Assembly: GCF_001194135.2 (NCBI RefSeq)
Contig: NC_068995.1
Location: 37,390,761 to 37,435,909, forward strand
DNA: 45,149 nt
Direction of reading: 5' to 3'
Source: Octopus bimaculoides
Lineage: Eukaryota
The translations under genes and the position numbers were made by a program. The notes below the pieces were generated by a model. It was not told where the DNA came from, did not search any database, and saw nothing but the letters and a program-made list of their open reading frames with translations. Of the stretch, positions 1,620 to 43,525 are shown piece after piece (the stretch's first letter is position 1; each line of letters opens with the position of its first letter).

Positions 1620-2160
1620 CAGGATGCAGTGAATAAACTGTCATCTAAATTATGCAAAAATGAAAATAACACTGACATCTAATTTTAGCAAATATATTTA
1701 CCAAAATTACATGAAAATATCTTGAAATACTAAAGAGTAAATTTATTCAATAAAATCCCCATTGGCTTCAACCACGGCCTCTAGACAACTTCGGAATCTC
1801 CTGCAACTCTTCTGGACGGTCTCCTTGTTTAAGTTTGTGAATGCTGCCATAATCCTTGCTTTCAGTTCAAGGTCGCAGAAATTGTCTGACAGACATAACT
1901 GAGATTCTCCTGCTTCTGTGCCTGTTACCAGACATAGGGCTTTCCAGCAGTCACCCACTTCACTCAGGGCAGCACAGCCTCCTTGGTGTAGACTTCGTGT
2001 GGACTCTGAGGCCACGTAGGAAGATTAATGGAGGCATAACGTGGCCATCACTAGTGATCACTCGAAACATCATGATGTTGACTGGATGTTTGATTTTTAT
2101 CACTCTCGTTACATGTCCTGAGATTGCATTGTCCCCAGATTGATACCCAAACAATCTGAA
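1620..2160 (-). mobile_element. Tc1/mariner-superfamily (maT/DD37D-like) transposase 3' remnant with one terminal end
   Basis: Translates to KHPVNIMMFRVITSDGHVMPPLIF and ELKARIMAAFTNLNKETVQKSCRRFRSCLEAVVEANGDFIE*; frameshifted and apparently deleted between SDNFCD and ELKARI; ends at TA|CAGGATGC (1620). Confidence 0.8.
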
Positions 2161-3266: not shown

Positions 3267-3672
3267 AGGCGCAGGCGTGAGTGTGTGGTAAGAAGCTTGT
3301 TTCCCAACCACATGGTTCCGAGTTCACATCCACTGCGTGATACTTAGGCGAGTGTCTTCTACTATAGCCTCGGGGCGACCAAAGCCTTGTGAGTGGATTT
3401 GGTAGACGGTAACTGATGGAAATTCGCCGTGTATATATTCACGTGTGTGTGACATTTTGTCTGTGTTTGTCCCTCCGCAGGCGCTTGATGTTGGCGTGTT
3501 TATGTCCCCGTAACTTAGAGGTTCGGCAATAGGACCGACAGAATAAATACTAGCCTTACAAAGAATAAGCCCTGAGGTCGATTACTTCGATTAAAAAAAC
3601 TTTTAAGGTTCTGCTGCAGCATGGCCACAGTCAAATGACTGAAACCTATAAGAGAATAAAAGAATAAAAAGA
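3267..3672 (+). mobile_element. SINE family A, full length
   Basis: Head aggcgcaggcgtgagtgtgtggtaagaagc, gcgagtgtcttctactatagcc, internal TG-rich stretch, 3' catggccacagtcaaatgactgaaac and (agaataaa)n tail. Confidence 0.9.
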
Positions 3673-3885
3673 CTTGAATAAATAAATGCAAGTAGATATC
3701 TATTTTGGAGAGAAGGCCTAGATTTCAGATAGTTGCGTTTACGATCATAAAGCCTTAGTTACGCCTCAATGGCCGGGTTGTGTGGTGAGTCCTTCGGCAA
3801 GACATTTCATTTCATGTTACTGCACATCTCTGTTTTCGTTTGTTTCTAAATGGCTTATAAACACCTTCTATGCTGCAATTGTTAT

Positions 3886-6524: not shown

Positions 6525-7140
6525 CAATTATACTGTAACATGACTTTTTCCAAACAATTTCAGGTTATCTATAAACAGAAGATGGTTCAATGACGGGCCA
6601 TTCTTCCTACATCGGTAACCCATCTTAACTTTCATAAGTGTCATTATTATGGGTATTAGAGTAACTACAAATAATAACGGAGAAAACGAATCCCCTTGGA
6701 AGATGTCCCTTTTAATATTAACTTCGCAAAGGAAGACATTATTTGAGTACAATTTGGTTTTCTACTCATTCATGCTATGCATCAGAAAATTTGTGATATT
6801 GTCAGCAACACCAAGCATCTGCAGGTATTCAACGATCCAAGAAGGAGGCATTGTACCATATGCCTTCTTAAAGTCAACCAAGACATAGACATGTTTGTAT
6901 AATGTTTTTTTTTTACAATAGCTCAAAACTGTTTCATCGATGACCAGGTGATGCTTGGTACACTGAGAACTCTTCCTACATCGTTTTTGTTCCCTTGGTA
7001 GTATTTCTTCCTGTGCCAGGGAAGTATATCTCTTTGCGGCATATACTACAGTGAGTATCTTCCAGATTATGTTGAGGCATGCTATGGGACGGTAGTTTCC
7101 CACAGTATTCCCCTTTCTGCTATGATAAGGTTATATGTTT
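6525..7140 (-). mobile_element. R4/Dong-like non-LTR retrotransposon, RT-domain fragment
   Basis: GNYRPIACL, EQKRCRK, DFKKAYG, IFQGDSFSPLLFV and LLFIDNLKLFG (decayed YxDD) motifs; stops and frameshifts. Confidence 0.9.
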
Positions 7141-9635: not shown

Positions 9636-10560
9636 TTGGGTTGGCAGGAAAGTAATTTCGGATTTTAGAGTGAAGTAAAAGTCATTTTTATCCATACAAA
9701 GAATGAACTTCAATGAATTATCTTTTTGTATTTTGTTCGATGTCTTTTTGCCATCTTTCTGGCAAATTCATGATTTCGTGCTCTTAGAACTTCTGGTCCT
9801 TAGCAGCCAAACATTGAAGTGCGATTTCAGGTCATCAACATTATTGAAAGATCTAACATTCAAACAATTTTGTAACCTTCGATATAAATGGTAATCTGAG
9901 GGTGGAACGTCAGGGCTATATGGTGGATGTGAGGTCACTTTCCAACCAAGCTCCAATAATTATTCCCCCAGTTAGCGAAGTCGTGTGTAATCTAGCGTTG
10001 CCATGGTGGAAGACGATTTCTTTACGATTTACCAATTGTAGCCGTTTTTTCTGTGATTGCGCCCCTCCAGGTTAATTATTTGTTGATAGTAAACATCTGA
10101 ATCGATCGTTTGGTTCTTTGGAGGCAGTTCAAAATTCACAACACCTTTGTAGCTTGTGCTGGTTCATTACGCATGGATCATGATCGTTTTCAATTGATGT
10201 TATTGTAGACAGTCCATTTATCCTCATCAGTGATGATTCGTTTCAAAATGAGGTCGATTTCATTGCGTTTGAGATGTATATCGCAAATATTGATTCGTTG
10301 TGTTAAGTTAATCTCTTTCAGTTTATGTGGAACCCTTATATCGAACTTCTTAACGCGTCCAAGATATTTTAAGTGATTTTCAGTTGTTGTGTGTGATACA
10401 TTTAACCTCTCTGAAACCTCTCTCACAGTTATATCACAATCAGATTCAATTATGGCTTTTATTCGGTCATCATCACATTCAGTAGGTCAACCAGAACATT
10501 GGATACCTTTGAGTGAAAAATCTCCAGAACGGAATTTTAAAAATCATTAATGGCAGAGTC
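9636..10560 (-). mobile_element. Mariner (DD34D, Hsmar1-like) transposase pseudogene with one TIR
   Basis: TA|TTGGGTTGGCAGGAAAGTAATTTCGG resembles mariner TIRs; translates to RVPHKL (WVPHEL-like), ITDEDKW, FHHGNARLH and HPPYSPDVPPSDYHL; frameshifts and deletion. Confidence 0.9.
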
Positions 10561-15610: not shown

Positions 15611-16010
15611 AGGCGTAGGAGTGGCTGTGTGGTAAGTAGCTTGCTTCCCAACCACATGGTTCCGGGTTCAGGCCCACTGCGTGGCACCTTGGGCAAGTGT
15701 CTTCTACTATAGCCTCGGGCCGACCAAAGCCTTGTGAGTGGATTTGGTAGACGGAAACTGAACGAAGCCTGTCGTTTATATGTATATATGTGTGTGTATA
15801 TGTTTGTGTGTCTGTGTTTGTCTCCCCAACATTGCTTAACAACCGAAGCTGGTGTGTTTACGTCCCCGTAACTTAGCGGTTCGGCAAAAAGAGACCGATA
15901 GAATAAGTACTAGGCTTGCAAAGAATAAGTCCTGGGGTCGATTTGCTCGACTAAAAGGTGGTGCTCCAGCATGGCCACAGTCAAATGACTGAAACAAGTA
16001 AAAGAGTAAT
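15611..16010 (+). mobile_element. SINE family A, full length
   Basis: aggcgtaggagtggctgtgtggtaag...ggcaccttgggcaagtgtc...internal (TA)/(TG)...ggtgctccagcatggccacagtcaaatgactgaaacaagtaaaagag. Confidence 0.92.
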
Positions 16011-16372
16011 ACAATATGAAGTTACATAATATCACACTGTTTGGAGTGCAAACACTTGCATAAATAATTGTACTTCGTATATCGTTGGGAAAGTAAGTGC
16101 GACAGAGTGAGATAACATGGCGAGGCGATTTCGACGCTGATGATCTAGATCGGCTGACTGGACTATCGACCTATGTTGGCGGAAGTACGTTTTGACACTG
16201 GAGACAAGTACACACAAACGCCCGCGCGCAAGTAAAGAAATACACATATAAATAGAGGGAGAAAGACATTGCAAATTATTAATTGAATACAACTGACATA
16301 AGCAATTTTTCTTCTCCCACATAAAAATAAAGAGAAATTTGCTCACAAATATTAACACAGAGAAAGAAAGAA

Positions 16373-24790: not shown

Positions 24791-25247
24791 TGATGGGTTT
24801 GGGGGAATGTGTAGAACCTAGAAGTGGAAACATTTACTTATTTATTTATTTATTTATTCATTGCGGAAAGGATGAAGACGATAGTAAGGATGATATTGGG
24901 GCGGTGCTGAATATTAACATTTTTAACACACAAGCCTTCTTACGAACTCTGGGAAAACGTGTATTTAATTATCTTACCCATTTATTTTAAGATACACGCG
25001 CGTTCAAAAGTATGCTCTTACAAACACACTCATATGCGTATGTGTGTTTCCTAATGGGTATATATATATATATATATATATATANNNNNNNNNNNNNNNN
25101 NNNNNNNNNNNNNNNNNNNNNNNNNNNNNNNNNNNNNNNNNNNNNNNNNNNNNNNNNNNNNNNNNNNNNNNNNNNNNNNNNNNNNNNNNNNNNNNNNNNN
25201 NNNNNNNNNNNNNNNNNNNNNNNNNNNNNNNNNNNNNNNNNNNNNNN

Positions 25248-25387
25248 AAACCCCGGTACTCATCCAATCTCTTTCTTTTGCCAAACTTCTAAATTACAGG
25301 GACGCAAACACACCAGCACCGGTTGTAAAGCGGTCGGTGGTGGGGGCAAAAAACAGACGCAAAGTCACACACACGCGTATGTATGTA

Positions 25388-25420
<33 letters not shown>

Positions 25421-25571
25421 GTTTCTTTCCGTTTCTGTCCGCTAGATCCGCCCACAAAGCTTTGGTCGGTCCAAGCCTGCAGAAGAAGACACTTGCTCAA
25501 GGTATCGTGCTGTGGGATTGAACCTGGAACTATGTGGTTGAGAAGCAAGCTTCTTACCACACAGCCGCATC
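25248..25571 (-). mobile_element. SINE family A (3' end lost in gap)
   Basis: gaagacacttgctcaagg...aagcttcttaccacacagccgc head, internal (TA)/(TG), cttttgccaaacttctaaattacagggacgcaaacacacc. Confidence 0.85.
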
Positions 25572-26070: not shown

Positions 26071-26091
26071 AAAGAAATATCTGCGCCATGT

Positions 26092-26335
26092 ATTCTTTTA
26101 TTGCTTTACTTATTTACTTGTTCCAGTCATTTGACTGCGGCCATGCTGGAGCACCGCCTTGTGGGGGTGGGGTAGTCGAAGAAATTGACCCCAGGGTCTA
26201 TTAGTCTTTTTTAAAGCTTAGTACTTATTCTATCAACCCTTTTTGCCGAACTGCTAACCTATGGGGACGTAAACACAACAACACCGGTTTTCAAAGCGGT
26301 GATGGGGATGGACAAACACAGCCACAGAGACACAC
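26092..26335 (-). mobile_element. SINE family A 3' half
   Basis: ttacttgttccagtcatttgactgcggccatgctggagcaccgcc...agtacttattctatc...ggggacgtaaacac, then microsatellite and gap. Confidence 0.88.
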
Positions 26336-26352
26336 ACACATACATACATACA

Positions 26353-26388
<36 letters not shown>

Positions 26389-27004
26389 TATACATATNNN
26401 NNNNNNNNNNNNNNNNNNNNNNNNNNNNNNNNNNNNNNNNNNNNNNNNNNNNNNNNNNNNNNNNNNNNNNNNNNNNNNNNNNNNNNNNNNNNNNNNNNNN
26501 NNNNNNNNNNNNNNNNNNNNNNNNNNNNNNNNNNNNNNNNNNNNNNNNNNNNNNNNNNNNNNNNNNNNNNNNNNNNNNNNNNNNNNNNNNNNNNNNNNNN
26601 NNNNNNNNNNNNNNNNNNNNNNNNNNNNNNNNNNNNNNNNNNNNNNNNNNNNNNNNNNNNNNNNNNNNNNNNNNNNNNNNNNNNNNNNNNNNNNNNNNNN
26701 NNNNNNNNNNNNNNNNNNNNNNNNNNNNNNNNNNNNNNNNNNNNNNNNNNNNNNNNNNNNNNNNNNNNNNNNNNNNNNNNNNNNNNNNNNNNNNNNNNNN
26801 NNNNNNNNNNNNNNNNNNNNNNNNNNNNNNNNNNNNNNNNNNNNNNNNNNNNNNNNNNNNNNNNNNNNNNNNNNNNNNNNNNNNNNNNNNNNNNNNNNNN
26901 NNNNNNNNNNNNNNNNNNNNNNNNNNNNNNNNNNNNNNNNNNNNNNNNNNNNNNNNNNNNNAATACATATATATATATATATATATATGTATTTATTTAT
27001 TTAT

Positions 27005-27645
27005 GGGTTTCAACCAAGTGGCTGTGGTCATTCTGGATCACCACCGTGACTTTCCGTCTTTATGCTGTGCTCTCTTCACGTTCCTTGCATGGATCTTCTC
27101 CTCCACCTGATATAGTCCAATCAAGAGTTTTGATGGCACATCTGGTGTATAAGAGAATTTGACATCGCTGCTCTAAACTGTGTCTCATTTGGAGCCATTG
27201 GTTCGTCTGGTATCGTGGAGAGGAAAGTATCGAGTTTTGTTTTAAAGACCTCTATATCCATGTCTTGCAGGTCTCTCAAATGTTTTGGCAGGGCATTGAA
27301 GAGCTGAGGTCCTCTGGAACCGAGGCTGTTGCAGTACCTTGTTCTTATGTGAGATGCAGTGGACGTTACCCTTGGTACCATGCAGTAGCGATCTGTGCGG
27401 GCATTCGTGTAGTACTTGATGCCAAAGTTGGTACCAGTCCTTCCAGTATTTTCCATATGTATATTATTACATATCTCCCCTGCCTGCGCTCCAGGGAGTA
27501 GAGACTTAGAGCCTTCAGTCACTCCCTGTAGTTCATCTGTTGGACTGTGGCGATCTTTTTTGTATAGTGACGCTGAATTGCCTCGAGTTCTGCAGTCCGC
27601 TTAACACTGTGGTGACTACAACTGAGAGCAATACTACTGGATGTA
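27005..27645 (-). mobile_element. CR1-group LINE, 5'-truncated 3' end with 3' UTR
   Basis: ELEAIQRHYTKKI...NYRE*LKALSLYSLERRQGRYVIIYIWKILEG, then RGPQLFNALPKHLR...FKTKLDTFLSTIPDEP; (TAAA)n tail. Confidence 0.88.
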
Positions 27646-27962
27646 CACGTAGGTATAGTATACATCCAGTAGTATATTGGATATTCACTGTCCCTCAGAT
27701 GGTTGCTTAACCTCTAACTCATATATATATATATATATATATATATACGCACACACACACACACAAACATATATGTATTACGTACTCGTACATATACACA
27801 TATCCACATACAAACAAACATACACACACAAGTATATATATGTGTGTATGTGTGTATGTGGCGGGTCTGTGTGTACGCAACTTCAACCTCATATATACAT
27901 AGGCGCTTACATACATACACGTAACAATACATATATATTTTATTTAGACATTTATACGTATG

Positions 27963-36358: not shown

Positions 36359-36480
36359 AGGCGCAGTTTCCGGATTCAATTCCACTGCATGGCACCTTGG
36401 GAAAGTGCCTTCTAATATAGCCTCGAGCCGACTAAAGACTTGTGAGTGAATCTAGTAGACCGAAACTGAAAGAAGCCCGT

Positions 36481-36511
<31 letters not shown>

Positions 36512-36930
36512 NNNNNNNNNNNNNNNNNNNNNNNNNNNNNNNNNNNNNNNNNNNNNNNNNNNNNNNNNNNNNNNNNNNNNNNNNNNNNNNNNNNNNNNNN
36601 NNNNNNNNNNNNNNNNNNNNNNNNNNNNNNNNNNNNNNNNNNNNNNNNNNNNNNNNNNNNNNNNNNTATGTATGTATGTATGTATGTATGTATGTATGTA
36701 TGTATGTATGTATGTATGTATGTATTTGTGTGCCTGCGTTTGTCATTCCACCATCGTTTGACACCGATGTTGATGCCGCCGTAACTTACCGGGGCGGCAA
36801 AAGACCTCGATAGAATAGATATTAGGCCTACAAAGAATAAGTCCTCCGGTCGATTTGTTCGACTAAAGGCAGTGCACCAGCATGGCGTCAGTCAAATGAC
36901 TGAGACAAGTAAGAGAATAAAAGAATAACA
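36359..36930 (+). mobile_element. SINE family A with internal microsatellite and gap
   Basis: Deleted head, ggcaccttgggaaagtg, aagaagcccgtc, (TA)n-gap-(TATG)n, 3' cagcatggcgtcagtcaaatgactgagacaagtaagag. Confidence 0.88.
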
Positions 36931-37103
36931 AAAAATGTGTTCTACCACATGTTAACATCATGTTCAATTCTTTTCCATGCTTAGTTATGAGACTTTAATG
37001 CAGTTACTACCATACAAAGTTTAATGCAGCGGGAATCAGTTCTACATCTGAAACTTGAAGTCATTGAAATGTAGAGTTTATTAGTAAGCACAAATCTTTA
37101 ATT

Positions 37104-37148
37104 AGGCGTAGGCGTCGCTGTGGTTTGCTTGCCGACCACATGGTTCTG
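37104..37148 (+). mobile_element. SINE family A head fragment abutting R4/Dong-like copy
   Basis: aggcgtaggcgtcgctgtggtttgcttgccgaccacatggttctgg. Confidence 0.6.
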
Positions 37149-37149
37149 G

Positions 37150-37890
37150 TCATAAACGTAGCTTCTGCGACACATTGGACGAAACAGTAAACCATCTCGT
37201 TTCGGGATGTCCTGTGCTGATCCCAAACGAATACAAAAATCGCCAAGATAGGGTAGGACAGTATTTACATTGGATAATATGTAAACAGTACAAAATCGGC
37301 ACTCCTGCTGACTTGTATGAATATCATCCTGAGCCAGTCGTTGAAGGTATAAGTGTCACTATCTTCTGGGATTTCCCAGTCAACACCGACAGAACGATCC
37401 AGGCTAATCAGCCAGACATAATTATTAAAGATAAGGAAGAAAATACTTGTTGACTAATATATGTAAGTGTCCCCACTGATAACTATGTATCTGTAAAGGA
37501 ATTTGACAAATTAATTAAATATAAGGACCTGGAAACTGAAATACAAAAGATGTGACATCTTAAAGCAAGAATTCTTCCTGTTATTGTAGGTGCCCTAGGT
37601 ATGATAAAAAAAGTGATGTCAGAAATATCTAGACAACATCCCAGGGGAACAATGTCCCAGAGAAATCCAAATGATTGTGCTGACATGTACTGCCCACATT
37701 CTTAGTAAAACTCTGTCCATTTAAATGTCTGTGTTGTATTACGTGAAGATATTTCGCAACTGCCCTTGCTACTTCCTTTCTCCAAGCCTTCAGTCAGACT
37801 GTAACATCTCTTATCCATCACTTGCCTTAGTATACAGGGTGTGTCTCGGAAAGTGATTGTAAATAACATGCAAATTAAAAGTAAACAACC
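37150..37890 (+). mobile_element. R4/Dong-like retrotransposon 3' fragment (array unit 1)
   Basis: FCDTLDETVNHLVSGC (CCHC), WDFPVNTDRTIQANQPDIIIKDKEENTC, KYKDLETEIQKM, PVIVGALG; 3' UTR followed by (CAA)(TAA)n. Confidence 0.9.
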
Positions 37891-38059: not shown

Positions 38060-40953
38060 ATTGCCATGGAGAACGATAGCGACATTATTTGCAACCTTAA
38101 AAAGGTTGATCGAAGGAAAGTGAACCAAGAAACGAAAAATGCCAATGAAATTCTGAAATACATCAGAACAAAAAACATCACAGAAACATATAATTTGATC
38201 AAAGCAGCAAGAATTGTTGTAGCAGAGAACGTGGGTGTTGATGGCAAGAAAAAGAACCATAATGGAAGTGACAAAGGAAAAGATCCATGGTGGAAAAGAA
38301 GAATCCAGGCAGGATTNNNNNNNNNNNNNNNNNNNNNNNNNNNNNNNNNNNNNNNNNNNNNNNNNNNNNNNNNNNNNNNNNNNNNNNNNNNNNNNNNNNN
38401 NNNNNNNNNNNNNNNNNNNNNNNNNNNNNNNNNNNNNNNNNNNNNNNNNNNNNNNNNNNNNNNNNNNNNNNNNNNNNNNNNNNNNNNNNNNNNNNNNNNN
38501 NNNNNNNNNNNNNNNNNNNNNNNNNNNNNNNNNNNNNNNNNNNNNNNNNNNNNNNNNNNNNNNNNNNNNNNNNNNNNNNNNNNNNNNNNNNNNNNNNNNN
38601 NNNNNNNNNNNNNNNNNNNNNNNNNNNNNNNNNNNNNNNNNNNNNNNNNNNNNNNNNNNNNNNNNNNNNNNNNNNNNNNNNNNNNNNNNNNNNNNNNNNN
38701 NNNNNNNNNAAAAAAAAAAAAAAAATGAGCAACTGGAAGGCCCCGGGACTAGATGGAGTTCAAGGCTACTGGATCAAAAGATTTGGTGAATGCCATGCAC
38801 GAATAGCTGCGCAACTCCACACCTTGTTAAATGCCGACCAAGTAACACCAAAATGGTTGACATTGAGTAGGACAGTGCTATGCCTGAAAAACATCGAAAA
38901 AGGCAATACAGTATGCAATCACATGCCGATATCCTGTTTGCCACATATGTGGAAGTTATTGACTGGAATAGTTGCAGAGTCAATGTACGAACATCTACAA
39001 AAAAAGTGGATTCCTGCCACATGAGCAGAAGGGTTGCAAGCGTAAGTGAAGAGGCACCAAGGATCAACTCCTTATAGACAAAACTGTACTTAAAGACTGC
39101 AAGAGGAGGAAAAGAATCTTAGCCATGTCATGGATCAACTATCATAAGGCGTATGATATGACCCAACATTCTTGGATTATGGCGTATATGAACCTATTTG
39201 GTATTGCATGGAATATTGAGCGATTGCTTGGAAAAAGTATAGCGAATTAGAGGACGGACTTGACAGCACACCGAAGAAGTTTAGGGACAGTAGAAATTAG
39301 GAGGGGCATCTTCCAAGGTGATTGCCTGTTCCCACTAATCTTTGTACTGTGCTTGATACCACTAACACTGATTCTGAGAAAAGCAAAAGCTGGGTATGTA
39401 TTCAAAAGCCGCCAATAAAAAGTCAACCATTTGTTATTCATGGATGACCTCAAACTTTATGGTAAAGATGAAGCCCAAGTCAGTTCCCTCAGTGATACGG
39501 TGCATACCTTCAGTGTTGATATCAGAATGGAGTTCGGGTTGAGAAAGTGTAGTGTATTAGTCTTGAAGAGAGGCAATATCAAATCTATGAACGGGCTAAC
39601 GATACTATCGGGGGAGGTTATGAAAGAGATAGAAGAGACGGGCTATAATTACTTGGAGATTTTGGAAATGGATAAATTGATGGAGAAAGAAATGACAGAA
39701 AAATTTAAGGTGGAATACTTGCGCAAACTGAGACTGATCCTTAAGTCGAAATTAAACGGACGGAATAAGATCGAAGCTATCAACACCTGGGCGGTTTCAC
39801 TCCTTAGATATGGAGCAGGGGTAATCGCATGAACAGTAGACGAACTAAACGACTTAGACAGAAAGACAAGGAAGTTGCCCACTAGATATGGGTTACTCCA
39901 CCCAAAAGGTGTCACAGACAGACTGTATGTACCAAGAAAAAGAGGGGGAAGAGGACTTATTGGATGCGAACAAAGCATTAAAGCAGAAGAAAAAACATAT
40001 CATGGTATGTAAAAATGCTATAGAACTGCTATTACTAGAAGTAAGAAGTTCAGGCCTGTGTCGGATGAAAGATTACAAAGATAAAGCACTATACAAGAAA
40101 TTGAAAACGAATGGAACTGAAAATAGGTGGGTAAAGAAAAGAATGCATGGTCAATTTTATAGGGATGTTGAAGATAAGACAGACAGAGGAAAAAGATGGT
40201 TGTGGATGACTAAAAGTGATTTAAAGCTGGAAACGGAGGCTCTAATCTGTGCTGCCTAAGAGCCAGCACTAAGAACAAACTACATAAAATACAGAATAGA
40301 CAGCAACAGCAGAAAGTGATAAGTGCAGAATCTGTGGACAAAACGGTGAAACCGTATGGCATATTACCAAACATTGTACGCCGCTATCCCAGAAAGAACA
40401 TAAGAGACGCCACGACAATATAGCCAGGTTTGTCCATTGGACAATTTGCAATAAGTATGGACTTGACAGAGTAAAAAATTGGTACGACCACAAACATGAA
40501 GGTATCGTCGAAAATAGAAATGGAAAGATCTTATGGGATTTTATGATTCAGTGTAATCATGAGATAGAGAACGGTAAGTCAGACAGTCTTAACTGAGAAA
40601 GAAAACAAACTATGCTGGATCATAGATATAGCGTGCCCAGCTGACAACAACGTATGCGATAAGGAAGAAAGAAAAGTCGAGAGATATGACGGGTTAGCTT
40701 GGGAAGTTAAGAAGCTGTGGTTATTGAAAAAAGTAGTGGTAGTACCAATTATTATCAGAGCTCTAGGAACAGTGAGCAAAAATCTCGAGAATAGGGGTTG
40801 CCATAAGGGTGGAGAACTTTCAGAAAACATTACTGCTTGGAACCGCTCGGATACTCCAGAATGTGCTCGAAAAATAAGAGGAGTTACCTTAGTTCACTGA
40901 TAGTAAACAGCTGACACCGTAGTACATCTCCAGCGTTAGAAGCTGTGAAAAGG
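38060..40953 (+). mobile_element. R4/Dong-like retrotransposon, most complete copy (array unit 3), pseudogenised
   Basis: N-terminal PWWKRRI, NWKAPGLDGVQGYWIK, RGIFQGD, LFMDDLKLYG, CRICGQNGETVWHI..HC, WDFMIQCNH, IIDIACPAD; several stops and frameshifts; N-gap 38317-38709. Confidence 0.93.
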
Positions 40954-40954
40954 C

Positions 40955-41036
<82 letters not shown>

Positions 41037-41057
41037 GTAGTAGTAGTAGTAGTAGTA
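40954..41057. repeat. Compound (CAA)n(TAA)n(TAG)n microsatellite
   Basis: Read directly; separates array units 3 and 4. Confidence 0.95.
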
Positions 41058-41061
41058 ATAA

Positions 41062-42647
41062 TTACGAGAGTGAGTACAATACTGGTCATTAATAATCACT
41101 AGAGAAATGACAATACACATTTTAAAAGACAAGATTAAAGGGAAATACAGCTCGCAACTATAGACCAATTACTTGCTTACCAGTAGTGTGGAAGCAGTTA
41201 GCAGAAATGCTTTCAGAAAGCAATTACGAGCACCATGGCAACCAGAATTTACAACCAGAAGAACAGAAAGGTTGCAGGAAGAAGGCTAGAGGAAAGTATG
41301 ATCTATTATATAAAGACAAAGCAGTTCTAAATGAAGTAAAAGCTAGAAAGAAAAATCTAAAAGTAACATGGATAGATATCAAAAGAAGAATTCTCCAGGA
41401 GGACTTGTTGTCCTCTTTAATGTTTGTCTTATGTTTGACCCCCCCCCCCTCAGTTTATTATTAAAGAAGGCAAAGTCAGATTATCTATTTAGAAATAGTA
41501 AGGGGAAAATTAGCCATTTCCTCTACACGAATGATCTGAAGCTTTTTAGTAAGAATGTAAAAGAGATAGATTCCTTAATACAGACTGTAACACTTTTCAG
41601 CAAAAATAAAGGCATTGAATTTGGCATAGGTAAGTGTACAATGTTAGTCATGGGAAGGGGACAGGCACTCAACAGCAAAGGCATCCAAATACCAGATGGC
41701 CAGACATTAAAATCATTGAAAAGCGGAGAGAGTTATAAGTATCTAGGAGTATTAGAATCTGACTGAGTACTAACTACGGAAATGAAAACGAAAATTGAGA
41801 AGAGGAAGAGTGAGGAAGTTAATTAAATCAAAGCTAAATGGTCCGAATTTAGTGAAGTCTGTAAATACCTTGGCAGTATCATTACTTAGATACTCAGCAG
41901 CTTTTGTAGACTGAACAAAAACTGAATTAGCAAAGCTAGACAGAAGAACTAGGAAGGAATTCAATATGAAAAGAGAACTCCACTCAAGAGTAGGAGTAGC
42001 AAGATAATATCTACGTAGAAAGGAAGGCAGAAGGGGGTTAGTATCAGTAGAAGACTGTGTGGAGTTCGTTAGAGTAGATATAGACTCCTATGTAGGTAAT
42101 ATTAAAAGAAAGTTTATTAAAAGCTGCTAGAGTCACAGCAAGAACAGGGAAACCAAAAACCCAAACGAAGTTTAAAACTGGAAAGTAGATCTGAAATCAT
42201 GTGACTGGCATGGTAGATTCCCAAAGGTAGTTTCAGCAAATAGTATTAGTGAGACGTAGTTATGGTTGCAGAAAGGAAAGCTGATGAAGGAGACAGAAAG
42301 TTTGCTAGTACTGCACAAGATCAAGCACTAAGAACTAATTGGATAAAGTTGGCCAAGATAGACAAACACCCTAGTAGATTCCCAATGTTGATTATGCAAA
42401 CAAAAAGAGGAAAGTGTTAGTCATATAGCAAGCGAATGTAGCACGCTGGCACAGAAAGAATACAAGAAAAGACGTGACAATCTAGGGAGTGCAATCCTTT
42501 GGGAGCTATTAAGAAAGCTAGGATTTGAACATACTGATCAATGGTATGATTATGAACCTAATAAATTACTAGAAAGTAAGAAATACAAGATACTGTGTGA
42601 TTTTAACACTCAGAATGATAGCGTAATAGAAACTAGAAGGCCTGATT

Positions 42648-42713
<66 letters not shown>

Positions 42714-43525
42714 ATAAAAAGAACAGAAAGTGCCAGATAATTGACTTTAGAGTTCCAAACGATGAAAAATTTATGAGAGAGAAAACATAGTAAAGTATCA
42801 GGATCTAGTTATTGAATTACAGAGACTATGAAAAGTGCGTCTAAAATGTATCCCAGTAGTTATAGGCGCATTGGGAAGATCTGAAATAAGTATAACACCC
42901 AGTTTAGTACAGTTGCAGTAAATAGTGTTATTAGGCGCAGGAGTGCCTGTGCGGTAAGTAGCTTGCTTACCGACCACATGGTTCCGGGTTCAGTCCCACT
43001 GCGTGGCACCTTGGGCAAGTGTCTTCTGCTATAGTCTCGGGTCGACCAAAACCTTGTAAGTGGATTTNNNNNNNNNNACCTTGGGCAAGTGTCTTCTGCT
43101 ATAGTCTCGGGTCGACCAAAACCTTGTAAGTGGATTTGGTAGACGGAAACTGAAAGAAGCCCGTCGTATATATGTACATATATATGTGTGTGTGTTTGAC
43201 AACCGATGCTGGTATGTTTACGTTCCCGTAACTTAGCGGTTCAGCAAAAAGAGACCGATAAAATAAGTACTAGGCTTACAAATATTAAGTCCTGGGGTCG
43301 ATTTTCTCGACTAAAAGCGGTGCTGCAGCATGGCCGCAGTCAAATGACTGAAACAAGTAAAAGAGCAAAAGTGTAAAGAGAGAAAGCTAGGATACTTACG
43401 AGGGTTCTTGGCATCTGCGGTTACTTGCTGTAACCCAATAGGGGGGTTCTGGACATCTGCGTCTATTTATTGTAGCCCGATGTTAGGATTCTTTTCTTTT
43501 CTAACAGTCTAATCTGTTGAGTGTA
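41062..43525 (+). mobile_element. R4/Dong-like retrotransposon (array unit 4), 5'-truncated, internally deleted, interrupted by SINE-A
   Basis: NYRPITCLP, EEQKGCRK, FLYTNDLKLFSKN, YKYLGVLE, RPDL(V)nDKKNRKCQIIDF; 3' UTR ends gtctaatctgttgagtgta before (AAT)n at 43532-43552. Confidence 0.92.
42933..43380 (+). mobile_element. SINE family A nested in R4/Dong-like unit 4
   Basis: Full head and tail; the sister R4 copy (7220-8205) is uninterrupted at this point. Confidence 0.92.

What the first reader, a model, noticed from the sequence alone, without database searches (positions are those of the whole stretch)
27006..27045. SINE-A 3' tail matches the CR1-like LINE 3' UTR, with a conserved stem-loop and a compensatory pair
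Seen: LINE ggtggtgatccagaatgaccacagccacttggttgaaacc (minus strand) aligns without gaps to SINE-A ggtggtgctccagcatggccacagtcaaatgactgaaaca (15957-15996) at 31/40 positions, both directly before a simple-repeat tail. Both fold a 5-bp stem with a 4-nt loop at the same place: CAGTC-aaat-GACTG in the SINE and CAGCC-actt-GGTTG in the LINE, with a T-A to C-G compensatory swap and a G-C to G-U change. Established: stringent LINEs recognise a 3' stem-loop that partner SINEs copy (for example eel UnaL2/UnaSINE1). Inference: a CR1-group LINE mobilises this abundant SINE family; the pairing may be undescribed.
Basis: partly seen in the sequence, partly recalled or inferred. Interest (0 to 1): 0.75.

Follow-up and report, generated by a model that had tools for sequence, protein, structure and literature searches.

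The report
SINE borrows CR1-like LINE's tail
An abundant ~400-bp SINE in this window ends in the same two-hairpin tail plus short tandem repeat as a CR1-like LINE, so the LINE's enzyme most likely copies the SINE; this kind of partnership is textbook and already described in other molluscs.

Summary
The LINE 40-mer (27045-27006, minus strand) matches SINE-A (15957-15996) at 31/40 positions without gaps. Its five best other matches in the window are exactly the five SINE-A tails; about 4e-6 such matches are expected by chance.

The tail belongs to the LINE family and is not a fused SINE remnant. Three independent LINE relatives, chosen by protein similarity only (57-71% aa identity; L001-L003), carry the same tail after their stop codons.

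There are two adjacent hairpins, followed by GAAAC and a short tandem repeat. More distant LINE relatives (28-55% aa) keep this architecture with different stem sequences. Across 17 tails, 204 of 212 stem positions pair, and six of the twelve shared pairs keep pairing through changes on both sides.

L001's tail is closer to the SINE consensus than the window's own decayed LINE copy, and it shares the SINE's AAAAGAAT terminal repeat.

Most likely the SINE took the 3' recognition module of a CR1-like LINE and is mobilised in trans. This mobilisation is inferred, not shown.

CR1-SINE pairs with stem-loops and compensatory changes are already published for bivalves and many other animals. I found no paper naming this pair. 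Verdict: a new member of a known kind, of modest interest.

The parts
27006..27650 (-). 5'-truncated, decayed copy of a CR1-like LINE: the C-terminal ~170 codons of ORF2 plus the 3' UTR. It has one in-frame stop and one frameshift. The stop codon is at 27123-27121. The 5' limit is approximate.
   Evidence: Reading. 38 protein relatives, E down to 1e-57. DNA similarity of 68-71% to L001-L003 over 27633-27143.
27026..27045 (-). LINE tail, hairpin 1 (GGU-G-GUGA....GAAU-G-ACC). It is weakened in this copy by two C-to-A changes.
   Evidence: The whole tail of this copy folds at -10.8 kcal/mol, z -1.39. Intact relatives fold at -16 to -20 kcal/mol, z about -3.
27011..27024 (-).
27007..27010 (-). Conserved unpaired AAAC that, with the last G of hairpin 2, forms the G-AAAC motif between hairpin 2 and the terminal repeat.
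   Evidence: GAAAC is conserved in the alignment of 9 tails, with two decayed SINE copies reading GAGAC and GGAAC. Distant relatives have GAAC or AAAC.
26962..27005 (-). LINE terminal simple repeat, C(ATAA)3 ATAC (AT)n, cut off by the assembly gap 26398-26961.
15612..16013 (+). Full-length SINE-A copy, made of five parts in order: a tRNA-like head with A/B-box-like motifs; a central body; an internal (TA/TG)n microsatellite; a 3' body; and the LINE-type tail 15957-15995 (hairpin 1 15957-15976, hairpin 2 15978-15991) followed by terminal 8-nt-like repeats.
3268..3675 (+). Full-length SINE-A copy, tail 3607-3645.
42934..43385 (+). SINE-A copy interrupted by a 10-N gap at its internal microsatellite, tail 43316-43354.
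36368..36935 (+). SINE-A copy interrupted by a 155-N gap at its internal microsatellite, tail 36868-36906.
26090..26354 (-). 3' part of a SINE-A copy, tail 26158-26120. Its 5' part is lost in the gap 26398-26961.
25256..25566 (-). 5' part of a SINE-A copy. Its tail is lost in the gap 25085-25247.

Best explanation
SINE-A is a ~400-bp tRNA-headed SINE. Its last ~40 nt plus terminal repeat are a copy of the 3' recognition module of a CR1-like LINE lineage (APE endonuclease plus reverse transcriptase).

The module consists of:
- hairpin 1 (3 bp, a 1x1 internal loop, 4-5 bp, a 3-4 nt loop);
- one spacer base;
- hairpin 2 (5 bp, a 3-6 nt loop);
- an unpaired (G)AAAC;
- a short tandem repeat.

Proposed mechanism, by analogy with stringent-type LINEs: the LINE ORF2 protein binds this folded 3' end of an RNA, nicks the target DNA, and primes reverse transcription within the terminal repeat. 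A Pol III transcript of the SINE that carries the same module is used in trans.

Shown here: the homology of the module, its membership in the LINE lineage, and the conservation and covariation of both hairpins.

Inferred: protein binding, priming on the repeat, and trans-mobilisation.

The actual partner is probably a subfamily nearer to L001 than to the decayed copy at 27006-27650.
For: (1) The LINE/SINE tail match is far above chance. BLAST finds it without prior assumption: the L001 tail hits four SINE tails at E 2.6e-9, and the L003 tail hits the window LINE tail at 8.6e-15 and SINE tails at 1.9e-10.

(2) The tail is a property of the LINE family. L001, L002 and L003, chosen by protein similarity only, all carry it 1-46 nt after the ORF stop. 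Homology with the SINE begins exactly at the first base of hairpin 1.

(3) Single-sequence MFE folds of 9 tails and RNAalifold give the same two hairpins. Z-scores are about -2.7 to -3.3 for the five intact tails that were shuffle-tested, and 95% of cells are paired.

(4) Eight more distant LINE relatives have GGYGGAGUCACCGACUUGGCC-G-GAGAG-AUUAUA-CUCUU-GAAC-(UAAC)n, which folds to the same architecture. In a structure-based table of 17 tails, 204/212 cells pair. Compensatory changes occur at H1inner2 (U-A/A-U), H1inner3 (G-C to A-U in one distant tail), H1inner4 (C-G/U-A), H1outer3 (C-G, U-G and U-A in both groups), H2_1 (C-G/G-C), H2_4 (U-A, C-G, A-U) and H2_5 (C-G/G-C). L006, L007, L009, L020 and L038 also show two hairpins before their repeats.

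(5) The L001 tail matches the CpG-restored SINE consensus at 34/39 and ends in (AAAAGAAT)2. The same unit ends SINE copies 3267 and 36368 and, in part, 26354.

(6) The relative L007 has a 992-aa ORF with Exo_endo_phos and RVT_1 domains.

(7) Established knowledge supports the mechanism. CR1 needs a 3' hairpin plus microsatellite, thought to be the RT recognition site (PMC8665684). SINE/LINE common tails are general, with CR1 and RTE predominant, and were supported experimentally in eel (PMC3747384).
Against: - There is no experiment, so mobilisation is inferred.
- The window holds only one LINE copy of this family, and it is decayed. Its hairpin 1 has lost two pairs.
- None of the four sampled LINE tails has the SINE's exact stem (CAGUC/GACUG). 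The SINE-versus-LINE compensatory pair is therefore a single evolutionary event, and the true master LINE is unidentified.
- The organisms behind L001-L043 are unknown metagenome contigs.
- CR1-clade assignment was not tested by RT phylogeny.
- The structural table is a manual alignment guided by the fold.
Confidence: 0.8

Rival explanations
1. Chance resemblance between two A-rich 3' ends.
For: None beyond the short length (40 nt).
Against: About 4e-6 matches are expected, and all five SINE tails are the top hits. There are 0 hits in 100 shuffles. BLAST E-values run from 1e-8 to 1e-10 between independent LINE contigs and SINE tails.
Confidence: 0.01
2. The tail at 27006-27045 is a SINE remnant fused to this one LINE copy, by nested insertion or assembly join, so the LINE family itself has no such tail.
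For: SINE-A is dense here: six copies in 45 kb, one just across the gap at 26354-26090 on the same strand.
Against: L001-L003, picked by protein only, all have the tail at the expected place after the stop codon. All four LINE tails share CAGCC/GGYUG, whereas all five SINE tails share CAGUC/GACUG. Distant LINE relatives keep the fold, so the module is ancestral to the LINE lineage.
Confidence: 0.02
3. A LINE outside the CR1 group is the real mobiliser and carries an even closer tail. The CR1-like match is then a side branch of a tail shared more widely.
For: The window holds other RT fragments (6765-7130, 39419-41763). The literature reports RTE, Dong-R4 and L1-Tx1 alongside CR1 as active in an octopus genome (PMC13282606), if that is the kind of genome this window comes from. 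No sampled LINE has the SINE's exact stem.
Against: None of the other retroelement fragments in the window shows similarity to the SINE 3' end. Every tail-bearing ORF found is of the same CR1-like protein family. The terminal repeat of L001 equals the SINE's.
Confidence: 0.06
4. The tail is inherited baggage. SINE-A once acquired it by template switching, but the hairpins are not what is recognised. Recognition would then rest on the terminal repeat alone, or on sequence rather than structure.
For: The SINE stem is invariant in the five copies, so within-SINE covariation is absent. Several unpaired positions (the G bulges, GAAAC) are as conserved as the stems.
Against: Stems change sequence but keep pairing across LINE lineages, while loops vary in length and sequence: 3, 4, 5 and 6 nt. 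Cross-group chimeras of the 5' and 3' halves would break 5 of 12 pairs (from the table). That pattern is expected for a structure under selection.
Confidence: 0.1

Closest known systems
Bivalve CR1-tailed SINEs: BivaV-SINE2 and BivaCORE-SINE1 with CR1-14_CGi, and Vhc_1 SINEs with CR1-1_CGi/CR1-14_CGi (Nishihara et al. 2016, PMC4824008; Matetovici et al. 2016, PMC4758252)
   Same: Mollusc tRNA-derived SINEs whose 3' tails match CR1 LINE 3' ends. The published text describes conserved stem-loops and compensatory mutations, and the same inference of CR1-dependent mobilisation.
   Different: Different SINE bodies and host class. I could not compare the actual tail sequences, because the figures are not held. 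Whether the bivalve tails are homologous to this two-hairpin module is therefore untested.
Amniote CR1 3' end: hairpin plus 8-bp microsatellite (ATTCTRTG)n (Suh 2015, as cited in PMC8665684). The tortoise Pol III/SINE-CR1 pair is a further example, recalled from memory.
   Same: A short 3' UTR ending in a hairpin followed by a short tandem repeat, often 8 nt, thought to be the RT recognition and priming site.
   Different: No sequence similarity. Here two adjacent hairpins and different repeat units (AAAAGAAT, ATTAAAAC, ATAA, TAAC...).
Eel UnaL2/UnaSINE1 (L2 clade), the experimentally tested stringent-type pair (cited in PMC3747384)
   Same: Shared 3' tail, a stem-loop just upstream of a short tandem repeat, and trans-mobilisation through the tail. 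This is the working model used here.
   Different: A different LINE clade and a single stem-loop. That pair has assay data and this one has none.
Nin-DC/Deu SINEs with CR1 partners, e.g. Nve-Nin-DC-SINE-2/CR1-5_NV, SINE2-3_SP/CR1Y_SP (Table 1 of PMC3747384)
   Same: tRNA head, conserved central domain and CR1-derived tail. SINE-A's central CCTTGGGCAAG... resembles the start of the Deu/Nin domain, from memory only.
   Different: Membership of SINE-A in the Deu/Nin superfamily was not tested here. The hosts are different.

Membership tests
SINE/LINE pair with a common 3' tail (stringent type) | The SINE 3' end is homologous to the 3' end of the LINE 3' UTR | tested here: met
   31/40 with the window copy and 33-35/39-40 with L001-L003. 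BLAST E-values 1e-8 to 1e-10.
SINE/LINE pair with a common 3' tail (stringent type) | The tail is a feature of the LINE family, not of one copy | tested here: met
   3 of 3 close relatives retrieved by protein carry it. The fold is kept in distant relatives.
SINE/LINE pair with a common 3' tail (stringent type) | SINE and LINE end in the same short tandem repeat | tested here: inconclusive
   L001 ends in (AAAAGAAT)2, like SINE copies 3267 and 36368. The window LINE ends in (ATAA)3(AT)n, and L002 and L003 have other units.
SINE/LINE pair with a common 3' tail (stringent type) | A conserved stem-loop with compensatory changes | tested here: met
   Two hairpins. 95% of cells are paired in 9 tails and 204/212 in 17 tails, with double changes at seven pairs (six shared by both groups plus H1inner3 in one distant tail).
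SINE/LINE pair with a common 3' tail (stringent type) | The LINE protein mobilises the SINE in trans through the tail | not testable with these tools
   Needs a retrotransposition assay.
SINE/LINE pair with a common 3' tail (stringent type) | Both elements are in the same genome with overlapping periods of activity | tested here: inconclusive
   Both are in this window. Ages cannot be compared with one LINE copy and six SINE copies.
CR1 clade of non-LTR retrotransposons | One ORF2 with APE-type endonuclease and reverse transcriptase | tested here: met
   Met in the relative L007: 992 aa with Exo_endo_phos, Exo_endo_phos_2 and RVT_1. The window copy is 5'-truncated, so it cannot be tested on that copy.
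CR1 clade of non-LTR retrotransposons | A 3' UTR ending in a hairpin plus a short microsatellite, with no poly(A) | tested here: met
   The criterion is as stated in PMC8665684.
CR1 clade of non-LTR retrotransposons | The RT domain groups with CR1 references in a phylogeny (as against L2, Rex1, Jockey, I, RTE) | not tested
   No reference LINE library is available. The C-terminal motifs (YCSQLW, LYSLERRRERY, FKxxLDxxLxxIPDEP) resemble chicken CR1 only from memory.
tRNA-derived SINE | Short, non-coding, many dispersed copies with a defined 5' start and 3' end | tested here: met
   Six copies in 45 kb at 71-92% identity. They share a common start at GGCGYAGGAGTG and a common end after the tail repeats.
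tRNA-derived SINE | A 5' head derived from a tRNA with Pol III A and B boxes | tested here: inconclusive
   Box-like motifs TGGCTGTGTGGT and GGTTCCGGGTTCA are seen by eye. ARAGORN and Rfam give no tRNA hit.

The most novel reading that the evidence does not exclude
The SINE family that fills a large share of this (octopus-like) genome depends on one CR1-like lineage through a two-hairpin 3' module that is conserved across distant marine-invertebrate CR1-like LINEs, and this partnership has not been named in print. If so, the SINE expansion could be tied to the activity of a specific LINE. The module would also offer a compact, covariation-supported target for the first structure-function test of 3' recognition in the CR1 group.
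Probability: 0.4. Interest if true: 0.35.

Novelty: new member of a known kind. Interest (0 to 1): 0.25.

Why it matters
It names the likely autonomous partner of a very abundant SINE, so the SINE's bursts can be dated and explained through LINE activity. It also defines a small RNA module (two hairpins, GAAAC and a repeat) that is testable by mutagenesis. It does not change how SINE/LINE partnerships are understood: CR1-tailed SINEs with covarying stem-loops are already documented in bivalves, cnidarians, echinoderms and vertebrates.

Tried and rejected
- A covariance model built from the 9 tails (R1) found only its own training sequences in the window and 43 loci. The distant tails were found by regex and folding instead.
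- The pattern scan of viral contigs gave 0 hits.
- The pattern scan of genome contigs gave one hit, L044. It lies inside a GC-rich bacterial coding region and is a chance match.
- An alternative register for hairpin 1 (GYGG with CCRC, plus CCA/UGG) looked attractive because T..A and C..G co-occur. It pairs less well (81-85% against 92%). It is also not upheld in distant relatives: L011, L021 and L037 break it, while the RNAalifold register stays paired. Both variable positions are CpG sites. I rejected this register.
- Literature full-text searches for tail and head k-mers gave nothing relevant.
- SINEBase supplements are not held. Albertin 2015 and Ohshima 1996 are not held.
- A search for target-site duplications in three full-length SINE copies found no shared word of 7 nt or more.
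- ARAGORN and Rfam gave no tRNA call for the SINE head. The one Rfam hit (Six3os1_3, E 0.4) is noise.
- The flank of L003 has no counterpart in the window, so the source organism of L003 stays unknown.

Full report
**Observation.** On the minus strand, 27045-27006 reads GGTGGTGATCCAGAATGACCACAGCCACTTGGTTGAAACC. It is followed by C(ATAA)3 and (AT)n, which run into the N gap at 26961. At 15957-15996 the plus strand reads GGTGGTGCTCCAGCATGGCCACAGTCAAATGACTGAAACA, followed by AGTAAAAGAGTAA.... The ungapped match is 31/40. When the LINE 40-mer is slid over both strands of the window, the best hits after itself are exactly the five SINE-A tails, with 31, 29, 28, 27 and 25 matches. Background never exceeds 23, and 3.8e-6 positions with >=31/40 are expected. 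A degenerate tail pattern with up to 3 mismatches finds six sites (five SINE, one LINE) and none in 100 shuffles.

**What the two elements are.** The LINE piece (about 27650-27006, minus strand) is a 5'-truncated, decayed copy. It covers the last ~170 codons of an ORF2, with one in-frame stop and one frameshift. The stop codon is at 27123-27121, and 75 nt of 3' UTR precede the tail. Its conceptual protein finds 38 relatives, with E down to 1e-57. These share YCSQLW, LYSLERRRERY, GPQLFNxLP and FKxxLDxxLxxIPDEP motifs. A relative with a long contig (L007) has one 992-aa ORF with APE-type endonuclease and RVT_1 domains. I call the element CR1-like on three grounds: this domain content, the 3'-end architecture, and C-terminal motifs that resemble chicken CR1 from memory. 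No RT phylogeny was possible.

SINE-A is about 400 bp and is present in six copies in the window at 71-92% identity. In order, it has:
- a common start at GGCGYAGGAGTGGCTGTGTGGTAAG with A/B-box-like motifs;
- a central body;
- an internal (TA/TG)n microsatellite;
- a 3' body;
- the tail.

ARAGORN and Rfam do not call a tRNA in the head, so 'tRNA-derived' stays an eye-level judgement.

I fetched the contigs of the three closest protein relatives (57-71% aa identity, 68-71% DNA identity). They were chosen by protein alone, and all three carry the tail 1-46 nt after their stop codon:
- L001: GGCGGTGCTCCAGCATGGCCTCAGCC-ACT-GGCTGAAAC, then GGTT(AAAAGAAT)2
- L002: GGTGGTGCACCAGCATGGCCACAGCC-AACTC-GGCTGAAAC, then ATTTTAAAAC ATTAAAAC
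- L003: GGTGGTGCTCCAGCATGACCACAGCC-ATAT-GGCTGAAAC, then C AATTAAAG AATTAAAA...

BLAST of these contigs against the window finds the SINE tails on its own. The L001 tail hits four SINE tails at E 2.6e-9. The L003 tail hits the window LINE tail at 8.6e-15 and SINE tails at 1.9e-10. Upstream of the first G of the module, the LINEs and the SINE share nothing. The 'fused SINE remnant' reading is therefore refuted. No other retroelement fragment in the window carries the tail or resembles the SINE 3' end.

**Structure.** RNAalifold on the nine tails, and single-sequence MFE folds, agree on two adjacent hairpins: (((.((((....)))).))).(((((....))))). Energies are -16 to -20 kcal/mol and z is about -2.7 to -3.3 for intact copies. 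In the nine tails, 95% of cells pair. Hairpin 2 pairs in all nine, with U-A in all five SINEs against C-G in all four LINEs, and one G-U. The third pair of hairpin 1 occurs as C-G, U-G and U-A. The SINE/LINE swap is a single event and so is weak evidence by itself. However, the loop of hairpin 2 is ACU, ACUU, AUAU, AAAU or AACUC while the stem holds. In the window's LINE copy two C-to-A changes have removed two pairs of hairpin 1 (-10.8 kcal/mol, z -1.39). This fits a dead copy.

**Deep conservation.** A protein-based scan of metagenome contigs gave 40 more loci at 28-55% aa identity. None has the octopus-type 24-mer. Eight of them do end in GGYGGAGTCACCGACTTGGCC-G-GAGAG-ATTATA-CTCTT-GAAC-(TAAC)n, which folds to (((.(((((...))))).))).(((((......))))). 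In a structure-guided table of 17 tails, 204 of 212 cells pair. The two groups differ on both sides of a pair, while staying paired, at:
- H1inner2 (U-A / A-U)
- H1inner4 (C-G / U-A)
- H2_1 (C-G / G-C or G-U)
- H2_4 (U-A, C-G / A-U)
- H2_5 (C-G / G-C)

H1outer3 shows C-G, U-G and U-A within each group. Chimeras of one group's 5' halves with the other's 3' halves would break five of the twelve shared pairs. L006, L007, L009, L020 and L038, which have yet other sequences, also place two hairpins directly before their terminal repeat. The module is therefore ancestral to this LINE lineage, and the SINE is the borrower.

**Terminal repeats and the likely partner.** SINE copies end in imperfect 8-nt units such as AAGTAAAAGAGTAA and AAGAGAATAAAAGAATAA. 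L001 ends in (AAAAGAAT)2 and matches the CpG-restored SINE consensus at 34/39, against 29/39 for the window LINE. None of the four sampled LINE tails has the SINE's exact stem.

**Mechanism (inferred).** The model follows stringent-type LINEs. The ORF2 protein recognises the folded 3' module and primes reverse transcription in the terminal repeat. A SINE transcript with the same module is taken in trans. This is the accepted model for CR1 (hairpin plus microsatellite as RT recognition site; PMC8665684). It is also the accepted model for SINE/LINE common tails, which were tested in eel UnaL2/UnaSINE1 (PMC3747384). Two consistent details are that copy 15612-16013 has no TTTT that would stop Pol III early, and that the three full-length copies show no target-site duplication of 7 nt or more. 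I give both little weight.

**Comparison and novelty.** CR1 and RTE are the predominant LINE partners of SINEs (PMC3747384). In molluscs, BivaV-SINE2 and BivaCORE-SINE1 with CR1-14_CGi, and Vhc_1 with CR1-1/-14_CGi, are published with 'conserved stem loops' and 'compensatory mutations' (PMC4824008; PMC4758252). The 2013 table of known pairs has no octopus entry. Recent cephalopod repeat papers list CR1 and tRNA-Deu/Core or 'unclassified' SINEs without naming partners. I found no paper naming this pair, but Repbase and Dfam could not be consulted. My verdict is a new member of a known kind. That the window is from an octopus-like genome is my impression, not a tested result.

**Limits.**
- Only one LINE copy lies in the window.
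- The organisms behind the metagenome contigs are unknown.
- The structural alignment is manual.
- There is no RT phylogeny and no experiment.

Noticed in passing
window 43068-43077, 36512-36666, 25085-25247, 26398-26961: SINE-A carries an internal (TA/TG)n microsatellite, at about positions 170-215 of the element. Assembly gaps (N runs) sit exactly at or next to it in four of six copies. This SINE's internal repeat therefore appears to be a recurrent cause of assembly breaks.
   Followed up: partly
window 27631-27648 / 27658-27675: An 18-nt inverted repeat (94% complementary, 9-nt spacer) lies at the 5' boundary of the truncated LINE fragment. It may be a 5'-end rearrangement made at insertion, and remains unexplained.
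   Followed up: no
window 6765-7130 (-), 39419-41763 (+), 40300-40593 (+), 42392-42787 (+), 37112-37450 (+): Fragments of at least one other non-LTR retrotransposon family. RVT_1 scores 31.6 bits at 6765-7130 and is weak elsewhere, and there are Cys/His-motif C-terminal ORFs. None carries the SINE-A tail.
   Followed up: partly
window 10193-10486 (-) and 1746-2024 (-): ORF fragments that look like DNA-transposase remnants. The first has only weak helix-turn-helix Pfam hits, and the second has none.
   Followed up: partly
P0017: A 94-aa protein, 63% identical to the LINE C-terminus, is labelled 'hypothetical protein, partial [Escherichia coli]' in NCBI/UniRef. This is most likely animal DNA contaminating a bacterial assembly.
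   Followed up: no
L005-L038 (3' ends): Relatives of this LINE use many different terminal repeat units: (TAAC)n, (AAT)n, (ACCAATAA)3, (CCATAAGTAA)2, (TCACAAGTA)2, (TTTCAAGA)2 and (CAGTAT)3. All keep hairpins just upstream, so the repeat unit evolves much faster than the fold.
   Followed up: partly
L044 7749-7777: The only tail-pattern hit in 185,579 prokaryotic genomes lies inside a GC-rich bacterial coding region. It is a chance match.
   Followed up: yes
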